Assembly (NCBI RefSeq): GCF_016433145.1
Contig: NC_058134.1
Location: forward strand, 215,265,475-215,329,474
Reading direction: 5' to 3'
Length of the DNA stretch: 64,000 nucleotides
From: Gracilinanus agilis
Taxonomy: Eukaryota
Under the pieces are notes generated by a model that did not search any database, was not told the DNA's origin, and saw only the letters and a program-made list of their open reading frames with translations. Shown here piece by piece: positions 12,773 to 63,301 of this stretch; the first letter of the stretch is position 1; every line of letters starts with the position of its first letter. Made by a program: the position numbers and the translations under genes.

Positions 12773-13959
12773 TTAAGTGCTTTTCCTCTTCTCCTTAGCC
12801 TTCCGGACCTCTTCTATCAAGTCCTTCAAATACTGGATCTCCTTGCTTAGAGAATCTGCCTTCTCCTTCAGAGCCTCATTCTTCTGTTCTAGTTCTCTGC
12901 ACTCCCCAGATAATGCCTCCTGCTCTGCCCTTTTTTTCTGCCTATAACGTGTGGCAGCAGTCTTATTCTGCTCCATTTTCTTTAACTTTTTATCTACCTT
13001 TTTCTCTTTTTTGTCCTCAAGGGGGCGGTCGTATGGCTTAGGATGGGCAGAGAGAAACATGATGGGATCGGAACAGAGCTGACTCTCATTAGGAGAGCCC
13101 ATGGAAGTAGAGGGGCTATGCTGGGGAGAACTGAGATAAGACTCGGGGCTTGTGCAGATCCCAATTCCACTATCATTATCTGAAGGAGCTTCTTCTTCTT
13201 TGATACCCTTGGGCATCATCATATAAACAAGTTCTGGGTTTCTGTCTCCTTCCAAGACATCCACTTCACTACCTAGTTCTAAACTAAAAGAATGGTCTGG
13301 AGTGGAGGTCAGGGCCCTCAGAGAAAGGGGAAAAGACTGATGGGAGGGGAGGGGGGCAACATGATCAGCTTCAAGTGTAGTTTCTGGGAATTGGCCAATT
13401 GAATTTACTGTTAAAGGGGCCTCTTTATCATTAGTTGCCAAGGGGTCGAATAGATCACAAGAGTCTTCCAACGTGGCCATAAGCTCAGAGCAGGTGGATT
13501 CCAGGTCATCCATACCCAGGAGGGCATCGAAGTCAAACTCCTTCAGATCCATTTTCTCCACCATCCAATCCATGCCCGAGAAGGCATCCTCTGCAAAACA
13601 AATAACTTTGTGACCAAGCATCCTAGACTAGAATTCAGTCAGGTATCAATCATCACTATTTCCCTATGACCCATTTAATAGCCTCAGCCCCTTCCCCGCC
13701 AAAGTTTCCATCAAAAAACCCTCCATTTCTTACCCTTGCCAAAGTCTGTGGTAGTAACTAAACTGTCCACAGCCAGCCAATCAGAAGAGGCTGCCTTAGC
13801 CTTGTCGCTGGAGAACCCATGCGATTTGAAGGGCTTGGCCTCCTCCAGGTAGTCATCTAAGGGGCTCAGGCTTTCCTCAGCCCCCAAACCCGACTGGTTG
13901 AAGGGGGACAACAAGTCCCCCCACAACAAGTCGCTGTTGAGGAAGCTCATCTCGGTCAT
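12773..13959 (-). CDS. ATF4: Activating transcription factor 4 (bZIP), 347 aa, 2 coding exons
   Basis: Exon 13734-13959 (MTEMSFLNSD..., donor AAGG|GTAAGA) plus exon 12773-13590 (acceptor TTTTGCAG|AG). Contains DAFSGMDWMVEKMDLKEFDFDALL and the bZIP KKMEQNKTAATRYRQKKR...EIQYLKDLIEEV. Total 1044 nt. Confidence 0.98.
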
Positions 13960-27234: not shown

Positions 27235-30050
<2,816 letters not shown>

Positions 30051-32026
30051 TGCTCCCCTAGGGGAAAGAACAAAAGAAGATATACAATGCTACCAATGAG
30101 TGACAACTTAACCAGTGAAGCCCTCACCCTCTCTAGAACTCCAGGTTGTTTCTGCTCACACCATCCCCACCACCCTTCTGACATCACGTCTCATACCTTC
30201 ACCAACCCATGGAGCCATCTGTCTCCTTCTTGCCTGTCCTTAGACTTCTGGATGGACAAATGCACTACACTGGGTACCAGCCAACCCAAGCCTCTTGCCT
30301 CACCCTGTATGCTTCAGAGGGAGATAACTGAGTCTTATGACACAGTTGGCAAGGTGAGAGTTGGGGGTAAGAATAAGTTCATTTATGATAGGAAGAAAAG
30401 CTCTTCCTTTTTTTATATAAAATTTCTTTAACTCAATGAACATCCTCTTGTCTCATGACGTATAGTCCAGCCGATTCCAATTCCCTGGCTGCATCTATAA
30501 AAATCTGCATGGCTACTTTGGGCTCCATTTCTCCTAAAGAAAGATAGCCCATTATACTGGCAGAGAAGGGTAATAACAAACTCAAATGTGGAAAAGACAA
30601 AACAGGCTGAAAATCCTTTTTGGGTACTCTTTTTGTAACTGTTGAGTTACAAGGTATTTGTTCTGGGAGATAAGTATGTAAATGAGAAAAATGAGAATAA
30701 ACATGTCTATCTAGGTCTGATAGTGATGAACAGAGTAAATACTTCCAGCAAGAGACATACTTGGAAAAGGAAAAAAAAATTCCATGCCATTCAGGTTCAG
30801 TCCCTCTCTCTCATCGAAGATGCCATCAGATTTGGTCTCCTATCTCTAGAGTCCTCAGGGTCACTAGGGATGTTCACTGGTCAGTCTGTATGGTCAATAC
30901 TTAGGTACAAGGATAATTCCCAAACAAGCTTGTATCCTGAATAGTCCCAAGATGGGATAAATTCAGGTCAGAATTATTCTTCATACTGCTGACCTATTTG
31001 CCAGCAATAAGATAAGGACAATCAGCATTACATACTGTGTAGGACCCTGGTCAGATCCCCCATTCCCAGAAGCTCATGGGTACTTAAGATTTTTTACTGC
31101 CTGCCACCAATATCTCCAAAAGCACTTTAACAAGCAATATTTGACCTTTGTTAATAATTCTGTTATGCAAGTTGGGCTGTGGCATTCTTGAACTTCAAGT
31201 TATTGCCTTTCCAGCTGCTGCACAGTCCTCTCCATTACATTAGAATATTAAGCTTCTTGAGGGCAGACACTAATTTGCTAGTCTGTGTATTCCCAGGGCT
31301 CAGCACAGGGCCTGGAACATAGTAACCACTTATAAATAAATGCTCTTGTTCACTTGAATTGCATTGAGTTGATTCCAGTTCTAAACAATGTTAACTTACT
31401 GTTCCATCATTTCAAAAACTCTGCTGTCATCAGTGTTGCCTTCTCCCAGTTTAAGGCTGGTAATATCCTCACATTCTGAGATTCGATCAGATGTCACAGA
31501 AAGAAAAAAGGGCCTTTATTCTTGCTTTCATTCTGCTGAATGTGGCAGGACTAAGCCTTGGGCTAGAGGTCTCAGAAGGCAGTCTCTAAGAGTGTGTGCA
31601 TTCTCGGCCAGATACTTAGGGAGACAAGCCAACTAGAGTTATTTTTACCTCACAGGTCAGGCAAGAATTTCCATGGTGTTACTCGGCTTCCAAGCCCTCC
31701 CCACCCATTATAAAGCTTGCCTAGACAACTCTAACACAGCTAAAATAAACATGATGATATGGCTCTGCTAGTTTTCAAGTCTGAATTTTCACTGCCTACA
31801 AACTATAGGAATCCCGCCCCCCTCCCAGAAACAAAACCCTTCATTTGTGAAATGGGTAAAAGAGCCCCAAAACACTAACAACCTGGGTCTTATCCTGGAA
31901 ATACAGATGGTATTGGGAGGGGGGGGGGCGGGTAATTACAAAGACACCTAGTGCTAGAGAAGCATTCTCCTGGTCTTAGTTCCTGTCACTGAGAAGGAAT
32001 GAGTCTCTGATAAGAACAACTTTCTA

Positions 32027-38967: not shown

Positions 38968-39368
38968 GCAGACAAGTGGCACAGTGGATAGATCACAATG
39001 CCTGGAGATGAGAGGTCCTGAAATCTAGCCTCTAGACCAGTGGTTCCCAAACTTTTTTGGCCTACTGTCCCCTTTCCAGAAAAAGTATTACTTAGCGCCC
39101 CCTGGAAATTATGAAATATTTATTGAACTCAGAATAGAATGTAATACAAAAAGCGTGGCAATCACCGATCCTCTTGGATCGCTGCAGCACCCACCAGGGG
39201 GCGGTAGCGCCCACTTTGGGAATCACTGCTCTAGATACTTCCTAGAGGTGTGACCTTGGGCAAGTCACTTATCTCCCACTGCCTACCCTTCCCCCTCTTC
39301 TGACTTCTAAATGCATTGATTTAGAAAAGCATTGATTCTAAGACAGAAGATAAGGGTTTAAGAAAAAA
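38968..39368 (+). mobile_element. SINE1_Mdo-like SINE split by a MITE
   Basis: 5' half at 38968-39037 and 3' half at 39229-39368. Confidence 0.8.
39038..39228. mobile_element. hAT-type MITE, copy 2 (different internal segment)
   Basis: TIRs CAGTGGTTCCCAAA...TTTGGGAATCACTG and TSD CTCTAGAC/CTCTAGAT (Charlie-type NTCTAGAN target). Confidence 0.9.
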
Positions 39369-39479
39369 AGTCCTGAGCAGAGCACACTTGGACCCCAATA
39401 AGTTGGCCTTCGAAACTGGAACAGATCTCTCAAATGTCCTAAAGACTCTAAAACAAAGGATCGGTTCCCGGGAAAGAAG

Positions 39480-40830
39480 GTGGGGGCTTTCTAAAGCGAA
39501 CAAACAAGCAGCCCTGATTAGCTGGCTTCAGGTAAGAGAATCCCAGGGCAGGCGAGGGGGTAGTGGAGGCTGTGGAGTGCATGCCTGCGGCCCCCAGAGG
39601 TTCCAGGTGGCCCAGCTCGGAGGTCCAGAAGCCAACCTAGGGGAAAACCGGGGAAGCAGCGATTCTGGCTGGCAGACTCCCCGAGAGAAGGAGCAGGACG
39701 CGAGCTGCGGGAGCAAGCACACAGCAGGCGCTTAATCCGTGCTTTTCTCTCCCTCTCCCCACCCCCCACCTCGGCGCACACAGAAAGCACTTAATCATTG
39801 CCCGCCCATGGCCGGACTTTTACCTACCCGAGCTCCTCAGCGCATTGTGGCCGGGCTCAAACAAGGCGGCCACGCTCCCCGCGCAGGAAGGCCCGGCCCT
39901 TGTCCAGCTGCCTCTGCACTGCCTCCGGGCCAACACCGGGAGGCAGCGGGCGGCGGAACTCACGGCGCACCGCCTCCACGTAGAAGTCACGGTCGGTGTA
40001 GCGCAGCCCGCGGGCCCGGCGCAGCAGGGCCCGGTACAAACCCAGTACCGCGCCGCGGCCGGGCTCGGCCATGAGGGTCCGGGGGGCCGGAGCCGCGCCT
40101 TAGCAAGCCGTCAGCGAGATGGGGAATAGGGCCGGAGTGGGGACGGGAAAGTAACCTCACAGGCCCGCTGCCTCTTCCTCCATGCCGCGGTCACCGGGCA
40201 ACATGGCTGATTTGCTTCCGGGGCAGGACCTCTGTTGAGGAGGATGGGGAACGTGCAGAGGACGAGAAATGGCCTTTGGGGGAGGGACTTCCTGTACTAG
40301 AGGCTACGCCTTCGGGAGACACTCCAGCTCGCTCGTTTGCAACCTTTCTTTCCCTCTAAGCCTCGACCGGAACGGAGTCGTTGGCTGTGGGCGGGGCTTC
40401 GTCTCCTGAATCCTCGATCTTTGAAGACAAGAATATGGGCGGAGCGGCATCACCTCCACTCAGCCCTCCTATTCCCCGTAGGCCCCTCCCTGAGAGGTGC
40501 CGTAAGTGGGTGGAGCTACACCTTACCCTTCACCTCCCCGAGCTCCGCCCGACAAGCTCCCCTCCTTAAACGCCCGGAGGAATGGGGTGGGGCTATGCGG
40601 CTCTCGCTCTATCTGTCGTTTCCTCCAGACACCGCCCCTAACCGTTACGTTGAGAGATGGAGCAGCCCTTTCCTCTCTCTCCCGTCCTATTCCGGTTGGA
40701 CCCCGCCTCCTCGGAGTTACTCGACATATCCTCTTCTTACAACCCTGCGTCCCCTTATCCTTCTGGGACGCGAGAGTAGGAGGGCCCACGCTACAGAGAA
40801 GCAAATGCTCCGGGAATAAATAATCCGAAG
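39480..40830. promoter_or_regulatory. MIEF1 CpG island / promoter
   Basis: High CpG density. On the - strand, CCGGAAG (ETS) at ~40214-40220 sits next to the YY1-like GCCATGTT at 40200-40207. GC boxes at ~40437 and ~40543. Confidence 0.8.
39857..40072 (-). CDS. MIEF1 upstream-ORF microprotein (AltMiD51 / MIEF1-MP / L0R8F8 orthologue), LYR-motif family, 71 aa
   Basis: [41 protein letters not shown]...[18 protein letters not shown] aligns with recalled human [41 protein letters not shown]...RQLEKGLVFLNGKLGRII. It lies on the MIEF1 strand in the leader, followed by a splice donor at 39823-39827. Confidence 0.95.
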   Translation of the reverse strand: [71 protein letters not shown]

Positions 40831-41014
40831 TAGTCTTTAACTAGATGGGTGACTCTTGGCAAGTCACTTCATTTCAGCCTCAGTTTCTTGATCTGTAAAA
40901 GGGGTATGATAACAGCACCTCTCTCCTGGGCTTGATGGGAGGTTCAAATGACATGACATCCGCTAGGTGCTTTGCAAGCCTTAAAGTGCAGTATAAATGC
41001 TAGATATTATTATT

Positions 41015-41275
41015 ATTAATAATGTTGTTCAGTTGTTTCAGCCATGTCTGACTCTTCATGACCAGATTTGGGGTCTTCCTGGCAAGGATACTGGAATGAT
41101 TTGCCATTTCTATCTCCAGCGTTTTATAAATGAGAAAACTGAGGCATACAGGGTTAAGTGCCCAGCCCAGGATCACACAGCTAAGCATCTGAAGCCAAAT
41201 CTGAATTCAGGAAGAGGAGTCTTCCTAACTCCAGGCTCACCCTCTATCCGCTATAACACATAGCTGTCCAATTAT
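41015..41275 (-). mobile_element. MAR1/MIR-like SINE sequence
   Basis: Reverse-complement RTE tail (TTGTTCAGTTGTTTCAGCCATGTCTGACTCTTCATGACC) and a MIR core. Confidence 0.7.
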
Positions 41276-41324
41276 TAATAATACCAATATTCATTATGCT
41301 AATATATAATACTAATATTAATTC

Positions 41325-41565
41325 AGGGGTAAAATTAGGTAACATAGTAGATAGAATGCCAGACCTAGAATCCAGAAGACTTGAGTTCAAATTTGACTTC
41401 AGCTATTTACTAGCTGTGGGCAAATCACTACTTAACACAGTTTTACCTGTTTCATTATCCATAAAATAAGACTGGAAAAGGAAATGGTACGCCACTCCAG
41501 TATCTTTGCCAGGAAAACTCCAAATGTGGTCATGAAGAGTCGAACACAATTGAAAACAACAAAAC
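41325..41565 (+). mobile_element. MAR1-like CORE-SINE
   Basis: Core plus the GGAAAAGGAAATGG...CCACTCCAGTATCTTTGCC...GAAGAGTCGAACAC tail. Confidence 0.75.
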
Positions 41566-42565
41566 TAGAATACCAATGTTAATTAGTTTTAATACTAAAA
41601 AATTCCCAAAACTCCAAGCTAGGGGGGCTTTGAGCACATTCCTCACCTGGGAGCCCCCTTGGCAATGGCACCAAGCTGGGAGAGGGACAGTTTCATGTGA
41701 GAAATAGCCATCAGACAACAGGAAGGGAGGATTCATGAAGAAAGGTGATAATGAAGTAGAGTTAGGAGTATGAGAAATAGTTTGACCCTTACTCTATTTT
41801 AGTAGACCCCTGCCTGTCCTAAATAATAATATTACCCCTATGATTAGTTCTAATCAGTATTATCTAGTTTAATATGATTCCATAGGAAAGGTAATTATTA
41901 ATAGGCAATAATCAGAAGTAACTAGGTATAGGTTATAGTTGAGTAGGTTGTTTCCTATAAGAATCTTTCCTCTCATGTTAAACATTAATTTGTCAACATA
42001 GCATGGAGGGGGCCTCTACCCACATGCCACAAGCTTTAGTTAAAAGTCCCCAGACATTTTAAGAGTCTCTTCACCCACTTCATTCACCATGACCCATACC
42101 ATGCAGGCCTGGGCAAGAGACTTTACTGAATCAGTGAATCATATCATTTTAGTGCCCGTTACTAAGGTGCCCAGGGCCTGGTGCTAAGAGTGGGTGTCTT
42201 GAGGATGGAGAGGCCGATGAGTTGGTTGCTATGTGTCCATCTTATTGTCTGGTAGCAGTGTGACTTAGAGGCATACAAAGAGTTTCGAGTCTACCAATGA
42301 GATATTGTGCTGATGCCTGGAGGATGGGGCTGGGCACTCTGGAGAAGGTGGGGGTCTCAGTAGGTGAGGAAGGTCTGGGATCCTATTTGTTAGAGGATGT
42401 GAGTTCCTCTAATAAAGTTATTGGCTCAGAGCTCTGCCTCAGTTGTTTTAGTTTAGACTGGACAAATTTCTGGTGTTACAGAAGCCAGACATGGGGGCTG
42501 GGGGGAATCTTCATTGCAAAGCTGAGAGCTAAGGATGTTGTATTTGATCCTGGAAGTGAGAGAGA

Positions 42566-44390
42566 GACCTCAAAAATTTTTGAATGTTGAACCATCCTTG
42601 CATTCCTGGTGTAAATCCCACCTGATCATGGTGGATGACCTTCTTAATTACTTGCTGGAGTCTCTTTGCTAATATTCTATTTAAGATTTTTGTATCTATG
42701 TTCATTAGGGAGATTGGTCTGTAGTTTTCTTTCTCTGTTTTTGGTCTACCTGGCTTTGGAATCAGTACCATATTTGTGTCATAAAAGGAATTTGGTAGGA
42801 CTCCTTCTTTGCTTATCATATCAAATAATTTGTATAGTATTGGGATTAGTTGCTCTTTGAATGTCTGATAGAATTCACTTGTGAATCCATCAGGTCCTGG
42901 TGATTTTTTCTTAGGGAGTTCTTTAATGGCTTGTTCAATTTCTATTTCTGATATGGGATTATTTAGGTATTCTATTTCTTCTGCTGTTAATCTAGGCAAT
43001 TTATATTTTTGTAAATATTCATCCATATCTCCTAAATTGTTATATTTGTTGCCATATAATTGGGCGAAATAGTTCTTAATGATTGCCTTAATTTCCCCTT
43101 CATTATAGGTGAAGTCTCCCTTTTCATCTCTAATACTGTCAATTTGGCTTTCTTCTTTCCTTTTTCTTATTAGATTGACTAGTACTTTGTCTATTTTATC
43201 TGTTTTTTCAAAATACCAGCTTCTAGTCTTATTTATTAATTCAATAGTTCTTTTACTTTCGATTTTATTAATTTCTCCCTTAATTTTTAGTATTTCTAAT
43301 TTAGTTTTCATCTGGGGGTTTTTTATTTGCTCGCTTTCTAATTTTTTGAGTTGCATGCCCAATTCATTAATCTCTGCCCTCCTTAATTTGTTAATATATG
43401 CACTCAAGGATATAAATTTCCCCCTGAGTACTGCCTTGGCTGCATCCCACATAGTTTGGTAGGATGTCTCATCATTGTCATTCTCTTCAATGTAATTGTT
43501 GATTGTTTCTATGATTTCTTCTTTGACAATTTGGTTTTGGAGAATCATATTATTTAAATTCCAATTGGTTTTTGATTTGCCTGTCCAGGTGCCCTTACTG
43601 ATTATTATTTTTATCGCATTATGATCTGAGAAGGTTACATTTATTATATCTGCTCTTTTGCATTTGTTTGCCATGATTCTATGCCCTATTACATGGTCAA
43701 TCTTTGTAGATGTACCATGTGCAGCTGAAAAGAAGGTGTATTCCTTTTTGTCCCTATTCATTTTTCTCCACATATCAATTAAATCTAATTTTTCTAGGAC
43801 TTCATTCATCTCTCTTACCTCTTTCTTATTTATTTTTTGGTTTGATTTATCTAGATCTGAAAGAGGAATATTTAGATCTCCCACTATTATGGTTTTACTA
43901 TCTATTTCCTTCTTGAGCTCTGCCAGTTTCTCCTTTATGAATTTGGATGCTATACCACTTGGTGCATATATATTGAGCAGTGTTATTTCCTCATTGTTTA
44001 TACTGCCTTTAATCAGGATGTAATGACCTTCCCTGTCTTTTTTAATCATATCTATTTTTACTTTGGCTTTGTCAGAGATCACGATAGCCACTCCTGCCTT
44101 CTTTTTCTCATTTGATGCTCAAAAGATTTTGCTCATACCCTTAACCTTGAACTTGTGTGTGTCTACCCGCCTCATATGTGTTTCTTGTAGACAACCTATG
44201 GTAGGATTTTGGTTTCTGATCCACTCTGCTATTTGCTTCCGTTTTATGAGCGAGTTCATCCCGTTCACATTCAGAGTTACAATTGTTAGTTGTGTATTCA
44301 CTGACATTTTTGTATCTTCCCCTAGACCCACTCCTTCTTATTACACTATTTTCTTTTACACCAGTGGTTTGCTTTGAGCCAGTATCCCTT
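42566..44390 (-). mobile_element. L1 internal fragment: ORF2 endonuclease, Z-domain and start of RT
   Basis: ORF2 from ~44307 ([56 protein letters not shown]). One in-frame TGA at 44119-44121. Ends abruptly after QGWFNI. Confidence 0.95.
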
Positions 44391-61663: not shown

Positions 61664-63301
61664 TCAGATTTCCCCTGCCTGTGCTGCCCTAGCCACGGCA
61701 CCCTCAGGGCCAAGCCCACCCCCCTCGATCCCCTTCACACCATCCTTAGCACCCACTGTCCCCTCAGCTTGACGGTAAGGATTTTCCAGCAAGTAGTGGA
61801 ATCGTGGGTAATTTCTCAGTAGATATTTGGGGGCATACATATGTTCGCTGGGGTCGGCAGGAGGGTATACCTGCCGAGTACCATCAAACCAGCCACCTGT
61901 ACGGATCAGTTCCCTTATGTAATTCAGGTCCCGCTTGTCTTCATAGTCACCCCAACGGGGGAAGTCACCATTCTGGGCTGATACCATCTTGAAGTAGATG
62001 CCCTCTGGGGTAAAACACCAGGAACAATGCCAGCCTGCAAAGTGGAGTGGGCTGCCCAAGGACCACTGAACCAGGATGTGGCCTGTGCGGTTCTCATACT
62101 GACGGAAGCCAGGCATGGTGTAGTATTGCCGTCGCCTCAGAAGGATCCCGTCTGTGCCATAGACGGTCAACAGCATGTCTATTGTGCAGCCTGACACTAC
62201 TTCGAGGGTGCCAGGTTGTTTCCAAAAGAAACCATAGAGTGATTTGCGCATATGGAAAGCAAAGGGCTCTGTCCAGCCATCATAGAGCTTGAGGAAGAGG
62301 ACTCCATCCCGGGCAGGGATCTCATCCGCATCATCAATGATGAAGACATCATCTGGCCGAAGGTTGCGCAAGCGGGATATGCCATCCTGGGTCAGGAAGG
62401 TCCGCAGATAGTCGTCAGCAATCCATCCATCTTGACGACCCCCTGGCGGAAAATGGTCCAAAAACACATAGAGGACCTTGTGGCGGATGTACTCAAAGCT
62501 GCCATTCCGAAGCATCTCACGGAATTTGAGAGGCCGAGGTTCTCCATAGGCAGTGAAGTTGGATTCGCAAACCACAAAGGCATCGACTACATCACCCAAC
62601 TCATGGAACCGCACATCCAGCAGGTCAAACTCATGGTTGACATTGATGGCATTGATGATCCGCCGTGGGGTCTCCCGGGGCACTAGGCGCTCCTTGGTGG
62701 GCAGGTTTGAGTACTGAACCACAGTGGGCACCCCACAGCTTGGCCCATGCCAGCCAGGCAGACACACACATTCCACCCACTTCCGACGTTTCATCCCCTT
62801 AGACTTCCCATTGGCCAGCCAGTTTCCAATTGTTAGTGGGCGGCGGGCTGTTCCCCCAGAGTTAGGGCCATCTACAGTCTCAAGTGTTTCCTCTGTCTGT
62901 CCTGCTGTGGGTTTCTCCAACATCTTGGTACCTGGCTTGAAGCAGACCCCGCCAGCTTTGGTGCGGACAAAATACTCTGCCCTGTCCTCAGGCAGCACAA
63001 ATTCCAGCCGATGGAGTTCCTCAGTGGCCCCCATCGGGGGCAGGGGCTGCAGCAAGGGAGAATGAGAATAGAGTGGAGTTCGTAGCAGCTCAGGGCCCAC
63101 TGCTCCCCCAGGTTCTGGGCTGGCTTGAGGTGTAATTGGGGCATTGTTCCACAAGAAATTGGCTACCAGATTGGGACTTAGGGAGGCCAGTTCCCGGGGA
63201 AAGGTGACATAGGACAGGGCCTTAAGGAAGTGCAGGAAGGAGATGAGGCACAGGCCAGCCATACAGAGAGTCAAAAAGAGTTTATGACGTCTCATCTTCA
63301 T
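61664..63301 (-). CDS. MGAT3: Beta-1,4-mannosyl-glycoprotein 4-beta-N-acetylglucosaminyltransferase (GnT-III, GT17), 545 aa, single coding exon
   Basis: MKMRRHKLFLTLCMAGLCLISFLHF type-II anchor, CVCLPGWHGPSCGVP, DxD-type IIDDADEIP, and AGWHCSWCF. Acceptor TTGATTGCAG|G one nt before the ATG. Confidence 0.98.
   Translation of the reverse strand: MKMRRHKLFLTLCMAGLCLISFLHFLKALSYVTFPRELASLSPNLVANFLWNNAPITPQASPEPGGAVGPELLRTPLYSHSPLLQPLPPMGATEELHRLEFVLPEDRAEYFVRTKAGGVCFKPGTKMLEKPTAGQTEETLETVDGPNSGGTARRPLTIGNWLANGKSKGMKRRKWVECVCLPGWHGPSCGVPTVVQYSNLPTKERLVPRETPRRIINAINVNHEFDLLDVRFHELGDVVDAFVVCESNFTAYGEPRPLKFREMLRNGSFEYIRHKVLYVFLDHFPPGGRQDGWIADDYLRTFLTQDGISRLRNLRPDDVFIIDDADEIPARDGVLFLKLYDGWTEPFAFHMRKSLYGFFWKQPGTLEVVSGCTIDMLLTVYGTDGILLRRRQYYTMPGFRQYENRTGHILVQWSLGSPLHFAGWHCSWCFTPEGIYFKMVSAQNGDFPRWGDYEDKRDLNYIRELIRTGGWFDGTRQVYPPADPSEHMYAPKYLLRNYPRFHYLLENPYRQAEGTVGAKDGVKGIEGGGLGPEGAVARAAQAGEI

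What the first reader, a model, noticed from the sequence alone, without database searches (positions are those of the whole stretch)
39987..40204. ATF4-like, splice-switchable uORF upstream of the microprotein
Seen on the - strand: two in-frame ATGs at 40204 and 40183. Unspliced, they read MLPGDRGMEEEAAGL* (stop 40157-40159), ending 84 nt before the microprotein ATG, which would permit reinitiation. A GTGAGG donor at 40160 and a pyrimidine-rich intron with its first AG at 40099-40100 define a 62-nt candidate intron. Splicing removes that stop and turns the uORF into an out-of-frame ORF overlapping the microprotein until TGA at 39987-39989. Inference: splicing could toggle a permissive uORF into an inhibitory one, like ATF4 uORF1 versus uORF2.
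Basis: partly seen in the sequence, partly recalled or inferred. Interest (0 to 1): 0.7.

Follow-up and report, generated by a model that had tools for sequence, protein, structure and literature searches.

The report
Conserved short uORF before AltMIEF1
A short upstream reading frame really does sit in front of the MIEF1 microprotein gene of this opossum and is conserved across marsupials. The proposed 62-base intron that would "switch" it is not removed in the messenger RNAs of two related marsupials, so this is most likely an ordinary, constant upstream ORF.

Summary
The "microprotein" is the AltMIEF1/MIEF1-MP LYR protein. It lies in exon 1 of MIEF1 in a didelphid marsupial assembly, GCA_016433145.1.

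The uORF is conserved:
- The first ATG and the TGA stop are present in 6 of 6 marsupial genomes.
- The uORF is 14-17 codons long and always ends 80-110 nt before the microprotein ATG.
- The first ATG also lies in exon 1 of a pangolin cDNA.
- That ATG sits inside a GCCATGTTG (YY1-type) motif, 8 nt after a CCGGAAG (ETS-type) motif. So part of the conservation may reflect the promoter.

The splice switch is not supported:
- cDNA contigs from the sister didelphid and a wallaby are spliced to the MiD51 exons, yet run unspliced through the homologous GT..AG interval.
- The AG is deleted in the sister species and is GAG in Australian marsupials.
- The hypothetical spliced frame differs between species.
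- The acceptor is poor.

The interval does lie where placental MIEF1 has intron 1. Short uORFs upstream of AltMIEF1 are already recorded in human (PMC9825577).

The parts
40215..40221 (-). CCGGAAG, an ETS-type motif 8 nt upstream of the GCCATGTTG motif
   Evidence: Read directly. Invariant in six marsupials and in pangolin exon 1. The motif assignment rests on my own knowledge.
40199..40207 (-). GCCATGTTG, which matches the YY1-type consensus GCCATNTTG and contains the first uORF ATG
   Evidence: 6 matches in the window against 2.5 expected. Conserved in 6/6 marsupials and in pangolin.
40157..40204 (-). uORF1: 15 codons plus TGA (MLPGDRGMEEEAAGL*). It is in the same frame as the microprotein but closed by TGA, and again by TAA at 40101-40099.
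   Evidence: Orthologous ORFs of 14-17 codons occur in all six marsupials. Pangolin has a 19-codon ORF that starts MLVGD.
40181..40183 (-). Second in-frame ATG in a strong context (GGCATGG). It starts an 8-codon version of the uORF.
   Evidence: It is ATG in the window species, its sister, wallaby and koala, but GTG in Antechinus and Macrotis. It lies inside the cDNA contigs L007 and L004.
40155..40160 (-). GTGAGG: a donor look-alike that contains the uORF stop codon
   Evidence: Invariant in six marsupials. The pangolin exon-1 donor GTGAGTGAGG lies within about 30 nt of the aligned position. It is read through in the marsupial cDNAs.
40099..40160 (-). 62-nt GT..AG interval, the candidate intron. 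It most likely stays in the mRNA as part of exon 1.
   Evidence: Its homologous intervals are unspliced in cDNA contigs L004 (wallaby) and L007 (sister species). Interior conservation is low, with indels. The acceptor is weak.
40099..40100 (-). Candidate acceptor AG (context GCTAAG|G)
   Evidence: Deleted in the sister species. It reads GAG in the Australian marsupials.
39857..40072 (-). AltMIEF1 / MIEF1-MP ORF (71 codons plus stop). Its start context is CTCATGG, with a weak -3 position.
   Evidence: Pfam Complex1_LYR, E=1.6e-6. PDB 5ool chain v, 'MIEF1 upstream open reading frame protein', E=5e-18.
39837..39845 (-). Two-codon mini-uORF ATGCGCTGA, between the microprotein stop and the exon-1 donor
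   Evidence: Present in the wallaby and sister-species cDNAs. Pangolin has ATGCAGTAA about 22 nt before the MiD51 ATG.
39826..39827 (-). GT of the real exon-1 donor (CGG|GTAGGT). The intron runs about 9.8 kb to exon 2.
   Evidence: Alignment of the sister-species cDNA to the window; sequence.
29898..30058 (-). MIEF1 exon 2, with the MiD51 start codon at 30050 and a strong acceptor (19/20 pyrimidines, TAG)
   Evidence: tblastn and blastn of L007 against the window; sequence.

Best explanation
This is the marsupial form of the MIEF1 5' leader. Exon 1 runs unspliced from a CpG-island core promoter through a short uORF, an 84-nt spacer, the 71-codon AltMIEF1 ORF and a two-codon mini-uORF, to the real donor at 39828/39827. 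That donor splices 9.8 kb downstream to the MiD51 start exon.

The 14-17-codon uORF is a constant feature of the leader, not a switchable one. Ribosomes that translate it terminate at the conserved TGA. They can then resume scanning over 80-110 nt and reinitiate at the AltMIEF1 AUG, or pass it. The AltMIEF1 AUG has a conserved weak -3 context, so some ribosomes also leak through to MiD51.

The GT..AG interval sits where placental MIEF1 has intron 1, but in marsupials it stays in the mature mRNA.

Shown: the sequence features, their conservation, and the unspliced cDNAs in two relatives. Inferred: that the window species behaves like its relatives, that the uORF is translated, and the reinitiation step.
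For: - Identity of the microprotein.
- Gene map.
- uORF conservation: the first ATG and the TGA are present in 6/6 marsupials. The uORF is 14-17 codons with an 80-110 nt spacer. Block 40208-40179 is 18/20 invariant.
- Sister-species cDNA L007 is 100% collinear with its genome at L002 2885-3246. It starts at window-equivalent 40192 and contains the second ATG and the whole GT.. interval.
- Wallaby cDNA L004 is collinear with L003 2865-3253 and is likewise unspliced.
- Pangolin cDNA L014 begins 30 nt upstream of the homologous first ATG. It carries a 19-codon uORF in exon 1 and removes a 1.7-kb intron ending 29 nt before the microprotein ATG.
- Human literature: the AltMiD51 ORF is in exon 2 (PMC6283296). 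Two ATG uORFs upstream of it carry ribosome footprints (PMC9825577). The microprotein ORF is called 'long uORF2' (PMC7619398).
- The leader is not unusually structured (z = +1.5).
Against:
- The two marsupial cDNA contigs begin 12 and 19 nt downstream of the first ATG. Whether that ATG is transcribed in marsupials is therefore unproven. If the true start is that close, the second ATG would be too near the cap to be used well.
- The invariant block covers synonymous positions and coincides with ETS- and YY1-type motifs. Its conservation may be transcriptional rather than translational.
- Indels inside the uORF are multiples of 3, but they lie in a GGC/GCG triplet repeat, where that is expected anyway.
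- Logan contigs drop rare variants, so a minor spliced isoform is not excluded.
Confidence: 0.6

Rival explanations
1. Promoter element only. The conserved block is an ETS + YY1 type core promoter or transcription start region. The ATGs and the short ORF are by-products. They lie upstream of, or within a few bases of, the cap and are hardly translated.
For: - The first ATG lies inside a perfect GCCATNTTG match, 8 nt after CCGGAAG.
- The block is invariant at synonymous positions too.
- Both marsupial cDNA contigs start just downstream of the first ATG, at window-equivalents 40192 and 40185.
- The second ATG is GTG in two marsupials.
- The peptide is not conserved in pangolin beyond ML.GD.G.
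Against: - The pangolin cDNA starts 30 nt upstream of the first ATG, so there it is transcribed.
- Ends of assembled RNA contigs usually fall short of the true start.
- The in-frame TGA is kept in 6/6 marsupials.
- Upstream ATG uORFs of human MIEF1 carry ribosome footprints (PMC9825577).
Confidence: 0.25
2. A 62-nt intron (40160-40099) is alternatively removed. This turns the short permissive uORF into a 51-codon ORF that overlaps the AltMIEF1 start out of frame and represses it.
For: - The GT and AG are present and the arithmetic is right.
- GTGAGG is invariant in marsupials.
- The interval lies where placentals have intron 1 (PMC6283296).
- The interior is variable in sequence and length, as an intron's would be.
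- The window species still has an AG.
Against: - The homologous intervals are unspliced in two marsupial cDNAs.
- The AG is deleted in the sister species.
- The acceptors read GAG/AAG and have a poor pyrimidine tract.
- The donor has CT at -2/-1.
- The frame outcome differs between species.
- The interval is very short.
Confidence: 0.06
3. The conserved GTGAGG is a real but minor donor that pairs with the strong exon-2 acceptor at 30059/30058. This would give a MiD51 mRNA that lacks the microprotein ORF.
For: - GTGAGG is invariant across roughly 80 My of marsupial divergence (divergence time from my own knowledge; sequence).
- The exon-2 acceptor is strong.
- Human MIEF1 has a transcript variant without the microprotein uORF (PMC9825577).
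Against: - No such contig was seen. The only marsupial cDNAs found carry the microprotein ORF.
- The conservation of GTGAGG is equally explained by the TGA stop inside it.
- The exonic side of the donor is weak.
Confidence: 0.05

Closest known systems
Human MIEF1 5' leader: short ATG uORFs (uORFdb NM_019008.6 ATG.1 and ATG.2) upstream of the AltMIEF1 ORF (ATG.3, 'long uORF2')
   Same: - Same gene and same order: short uORF(s), then the LYR microprotein ORF, then MiD51.
- The upstream uORFs lie in the first exon, and ribosome footprints on them are reported (PMC9825577, PMC7619398).
- The pangolin cDNA shows the homologous ATG in exon 1.
   Different: - In human and pangolin an intron separates the uORF exon from the microprotein exon (PMC6283296). 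In the marsupial cDNAs the two are one continuous exon.
- No human sequence was fetched, so orthology of the marsupial ATG to human ATG.1 or ATG.2 is inferred through pangolin only.
ATF4 / GCN4 delayed-reinitiation leaders
   Same: - A short 5'-proximal uORF is followed, after a spacer long enough for reinitiation, by a longer ORF that competes with the main coding sequence.
- MIEF1 main-ORF translation is reported to be partly resistant to eIF2 inhibition (PMC4383229).
   Different: - In the unspliced mRNA nothing overlaps anything. uORF1 ends 84 nt before AltMIEF1, and AltMIEF1 ends before the MiD51 ATG.
- The second ORF encodes a functional protein rather than a purely inhibitory uORF.
- The overlap needed for the ATF4 analogy appears only after a splice for which there is no evidence.
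- The true ATF4 gene lies about 13 kb away in this same window.
Leaders whose uORF content is changed by alternative 5'UTR splicing or promoter use (for example MDM2 long/short leaders and thrombopoietin 5'UTR variants; named from my own knowledge)
   Same: The idea that removing or keeping a 5'UTR segment changes which uORFs precede the coding sequence. Human MIEF1 variants with different upstream uORF sets are noted in PMC9825577.
   Different: Here no alternative isoform has been observed. The two available marsupial cDNAs show one form only.

Membership tests
ATF4/GCN4-type delayed-reinitiation leader | Short 5'-proximal uORF followed by a spacer that permits reinitiation | tested here: met
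   The uORF is 8-15 codons with an 84-nt spacer in the window, and 14-17 codons with 80-110 nt in six marsupials. This is sequence evidence only.
ATF4/GCN4-type delayed-reinitiation leader | Downstream inhibitory uORF that overlaps the regulated ORF out of frame | tested here: not met
   In the unspliced mRNA seen in relatives, uORF1 ends before AltMIEF1 and AltMIEF1 ends before the MiD51 ATG. An overlap arises only in the hypothetical spliced form.
ATF4/GCN4-type delayed-reinitiation leader | Response to eIF2-alpha phosphorylation | not testable with these tools
   There is only a human literature hint: MIEF1 translation-efficiency Z-score 2.88 under arsenite (PMC4383229).
Alternatively spliced 5'UTR intron | Both spliced and unspliced RNA forms exist | tested here: not met
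   Only the unspliced form is found in wallaby (L004) and sister-species (L007) cDNA contigs.
Alternatively spliced 5'UTR intron | Competent and conserved splice signals | tested here: not met
   - Donor: CCT|GTGAGG.
- Acceptor: AAG with 12/20 pyrimidines, against 19/20 at the real exon-2 acceptor.
- The AG is deleted in the sister species and reads GAG elsewhere.
Alternatively spliced 5'UTR intron | Conserved reading-frame consequence of splicing | tested here: not met
   The frame relative to the microprotein would be 1, 2, 1 and 0 in the window species, wallaby, koala and Macrotis.
MIEF1 exon-1 uORF (therian) | ATG upstream of AltMIEF1 conserved across species and closed before the microprotein ATG | tested here: met
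   Met in 6/6 marsupials and in pangolin.
MIEF1 exon-1 uORF (therian) | ATG lies within the mature mRNA | tested here: inconclusive
   - First ATG: inside the pangolin cDNA, but 12-19 nt upstream of the ends of the marsupial cDNA contigs.
- Second ATG: inside both marsupial cDNAs.
MIEF1 exon-1 uORF (therian) | Ribosome occupancy | not testable with these tools
   Footprints are reported for human ATG.1 and ATG.2 only (PMC9825577).
ETS + YY1 type core promoter | Motif matches CCGGAAG and GCCATNTTG, conserved | tested here: met
   The motif names come from my own knowledge.
ETS + YY1 type core promoter | Motifs positioned at or just downstream of the transcription start | tested here: inconclusive
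   cDNA contig ends lie at -30 (pangolin) and at +12 and +19 (marsupials) relative to the first ATG. No CAGE data were available.

The most novel reading that the evidence does not exclude
The 62-nt GT..AG interval is the shrunken remnant of the intron that separates exon 1 from the microprotein exon in placental MIEF1. The window species, unlike its sister, still keeps an AG. A minor or condition-dependent splice could therefore survive there. It would fuse the uORF to a 51-codon frame overlapping the AltMIEF1 start, giving a lineage-specific splice-controlled brake on a mitoribosome assembly factor.
Probability: 0.07. Interest if true: 0.6.

Novelty: new member of a known kind. Interest (0 to 1): 0.25.

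Why it matters
MIEF1 is the textbook bicistronic human gene. Its leader ORF makes a mitoribosome and complex I assembly factor that is more abundant than the annotated protein.

This window shows that the short uORF in front of that microprotein is conserved across marsupials and shared with a placental. The microprotein start keeps a weak context. Marsupials carry the whole leader as one exon where placentals have an intron. Together these give a natural comparison for testing how uORF1, the microprotein ORF and MiD51 share ribosomes.

It does not reveal a new regulatory principle. The splice-switch idea, which would have been the novel part, is contradicted by the available cDNAs.

Tried and rejected
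- No junction or start-site reads exist for this species.
- **Exact look-up of the microprotein** returned only two genome assemblies and no RNA contig of the window species.
- **Look-up of the sister-species MiD51 protein** gave no further cDNA contigs.
- **Sauropsid contigs** are genomic, not cDNA. Whether the intron position is ancestral stays open. The alignment of the sauropsid branch-point / pyrimidine tract / AG look-alike to the marsupial AG is ambiguous.
- **Homology of the marsupial GTGAGG to the pangolin donor** is ambiguous. MAFFT instead aligns it to an exonic GCGAGG 30 nt upstream of the pangolin donor.
- **RNA structure in the leader:** none beyond shuffles (z = +1.5).
- **Rfam:** no match in 39000-41500.
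- **Bacterial-type promoter/terminator scan:** empty and not relevant.
- **Alternative donor at 40527:** not conserved even in the sister species.
- The joins were local arithmetic only.
- **Human sequence:** none was fetched or compared. Statements about human come from papers.
- **Species names.** The species behind the two didelphid assemblies are my recollection only: I believe GCA_016433145.1 is Gracilinanus agilis and GCA_027887165.1 is Monodelphis domestica. I did not check this.

Full report
**1. The observation**

All positions below are on the minus strand.
- ATG at 40204 and an in-frame ATG at 40183.
- Peptide MLPGDRGMEEEAAGL, stop TGA at 40159-40157.
- 84 nt from the stop to the ATG at 40072.
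- GTGAGG at 40160-40155, and the first AG at 40100-40099, so the interval is 62 nt.
- Joining 40161 to 40098 gives a 51-codon ORF, +1 relative to the downstream ORF, ending at TGA 39989-39987.

The hexamer GTGAGG is at chance frequency in the window: 41 copies against 38.5 expected.

**2. What the locus is**

The downstream 71-codon ORF (40072-39857) is the LYR-family microprotein AltMIEF1 / MIEF1-MP.
- Pfam Complex1_LYR, E = 1.6e-6.
- PDB 5ool chain v, "MIEF1 upstream open reading frame protein", E = 5e-18.

An exact-sequence look-up places the window on CM028239.1 of assembly GCA_016433145.1 (L001, identical). A second assembly, GCA_027887165.1 (L002), encodes the same microprotein. Its flanks are 94% identical to the window. 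I believe both are didelphid opossums, but this is from memory and unchecked.

Aligning a sister-species cDNA to the window gives the gene map:

| Feature | Window coordinates (minus strand) |
|---|---|
| Exon 1 | at least 40192 down to 39828, donor CGG\|GTAGGT |
| Intron | about 9.8 kb |
| Exon 2 | from 30058, with the MiD51 ATG at 30050 |
| Three further exons | down to about 26718 |

The same window also holds ATF4 (bZIP exon 12773-13621; PDB 1ci6, E = 8e-28). It also holds a GT17 glycosyltransferase gene at 61664-63301.

**3. Conservation**

I fetched orthologous loci from wallaby, koala, Antechinus and Macrotis and from pangolin.

In all six marsupial genomes:
- The first ATG is present.
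- The ORF is 14-17 codons long.
- It ends at a TGA embedded in an invariant GTGAGG.
- The stop lies 80-110 nt before the microprotein ATG.

The second ATG is GTG in Antechinus and Macrotis.

A sliding count of invariant columns gives:
- 18/20 for 40208-40179, equal to the microprotein coding sequence;
- 0-6/20, with length variation, inside the candidate intron;
- a rise again over the last 30 nt before the microprotein ATG.

The invariant block includes synonymous positions. It consists of CCGGAAG, 8 nt, then GCCATGTTG. I recognise these as ETS-type and YY1-type (GCCATNTTG) promoter motifs. The second motif has 6 matches in the window against 2.5 expected. The region is a CpG island.

The length differences inside the uORF are multiples of three. 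They lie in a GGC/GCG repeat, so this is weak evidence for coding constraint.

**4. RNA evidence from relatives**

*Sister didelphid, Logan contig L007.* The contig holds the microprotein ORF and the complete 465-aa MiD51 coding sequence, so it is a spliced mRNA. Its first 362 nt are 100% collinear with the genome at L002 2885-3246.
- It starts at window-equivalent 40192.
- It contains the second ATG.
- It runs straight through the GTGAGG and the rest of the interval.

*Wallaby, contig L004.* This is also joined to the MiD51 exons. It is collinear with L003 2865-3253. It starts 2 nt before the second ATG and is likewise unspliced, although the wallaby has an AG at the homologous place.

*Pangolin, cDNA L014.* This one is spliced.
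- Exon 1 (L011 1165-1270) begins 30 nt upstream of the homologous GCCATGTTG.
- It carries a 19-codon uORF starting MLVGD and ends at CGG|GTGAGTGAGG.
- A 1.7-kb intron follows.
- Exon 2 begins 29 nt before the microprotein ATG.

This agrees with the human literature, where the AltMiD51 ORF is in exon 2 (PMC6283296).

In the two marsupial mRNAs available it is retained as exon.

**5. Why the splice switch is unlikely**

- The candidate AG is removed by a 4-bp deletion in the sister species. It is GAG in the four Australian marsupials.
- The 20 nt before it hold 12 pyrimidines and the acceptor reads AAG. The real exon-2 acceptor has 19/20 pyrimidines and TAG.
- All four real donors of this gene have G at -1. 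The candidate has CT at -2/-1.
- The CTGAC branch-like site is only 12 nt from the AG.
- If the homologous sites were spliced, the uORF would fall in frame 1, 2, 1 or 0 relative to the microprotein, depending on species. Selection cannot be maintaining the proposed out-of-frame overlap.
- The alternative donor at 40527 is destroyed in the sister species and lies in a non-conserved stretch.

**6. Most likely mechanism**

The uORF is a constant element of an unspliced leader. The start contexts are:

| Start codon | Context | Strength |
|---|---|---|
| First uORF ATG | GCCATGT | adequate |
| Second uORF ATG | GGCATGG | strong |
| AltMIEF1 ATG | CTCATGG | weak -3 position |

The weak AltMIEF1 context recurs as CCCATGG in pangolin and sauropsids.

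I infer the following sequence of events:
1. Some scanning ribosomes translate the short uORF and terminate at the TGA.
2. They resume scanning and reinitiate at AltMIEF1 after 84 nt.
3. Ribosomes that leak past or bypass AltMIEF1 reach MiD51.
4. On the way they meet a conserved two-codon mini-uORF, ATGCGCTGA at 39845-39837.

The leader is not unusually folded and matches no Rfam family.

This layout could by itself give some eIF2-dependent shift between the microprotein and MiD51, as reported for human MIEF1 (PMC4383229). It lacks the overlapping inhibitory uORF that defines the ATF4 mechanism.

The main uncertainty is the transcription start. The marsupial contig ends fall just after the first ATG. 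A promoter-only reading of the conservation therefore keeps about a quarter of the probability.

**7. Novelty**

Short ATG uORFs upstream of AltMIEF1 are already on record for human. Ribosome footprints on them are reported, and transcript variants differ in their upstream uORF sets (PMC9825577). The microprotein ORF is called "long uORF2" in PMC7619398.

The marsupial uORF is therefore a new member of a known arrangement. The mildly new point is structural: marsupials have one continuous exon where placentals have an intron.

**8. Limits**

Nothing here comes from RNA of the window species.
- I fetched no human sequence.

Noticed in passing
window 12773-13621 (-): The true ATF4 gene (bZIP exon; PDB 1ci6, E = 8e-28) lies about 13 kb downstream of the last MIEF1 exon on the same strand. 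A GT17 glycosyltransferase (MGAT3-like) ORF lies at 61664-63301 (-). The order MGAT3, MIEF1, ATF4 matches my recollection of the human locus.
   Followed up: partly
window 39837-39845 (-): A two-codon mini-uORF, ATGCGCTGA, sits between the microprotein stop and the exon-1 donor, about 25 nt before the MiD51 ATG in the spliced mRNA. It is present in the wallaby and sister-species cDNAs. Pangolin has ATGCAGTAA about 22 nt before its MiD51 ATG.
   Followed up: partly
window 40070-40075 (-); L011, L020, L025, L026: The AltMIEF1 start keeps a pyrimidine at -3 (CTCATGG in marsupials, CCCATGG in pangolin and three sauropsid loci). This is a conserved weak context that would allow leaky scanning to MiD51.
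   Followed up: partly
L002 about 2970; L007 33-332: The 4-bp deletion in the sister species puts the stretch from GTGAGG onward in frame with the microprotein. A gene caller therefore reported a 99-aa GTG-initiated product (P0028). This is probably a calling artefact, not a real isoform.
   Followed up: partly
L020 690-1022; L025 1131-1454: In two sauropsid genomic contigs the frame is open from a GGC(A/G)TGGAGG block into the microprotein. This gives 107-110-aa ORF calls that start at ATG in L025 and GTG in L020. The block resembles the marsupial second-ATG region. A branch-point, pyrimidine tract and AG look-alike lies 30-39 nt before the microprotein ATG. No RNA evidence was available.
   Followed up: partly
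window 40425-40445 and 40310-40325 (-); L003, L005, L006: Australian marsupials carry TGACGTCA (CRE-like) and TCTCGCGAG motifs in the MIEF1 upstream region. Both are degenerate in the two didelphids.
   Followed up: no
window 42529-44091 (-): A 520-aa ORF with endonuclease and reverse-transcriptase domains (LINE-type retroelement fragment) lies about 2.3 kb upstream of the MIEF1 promoter.
   Followed up: no
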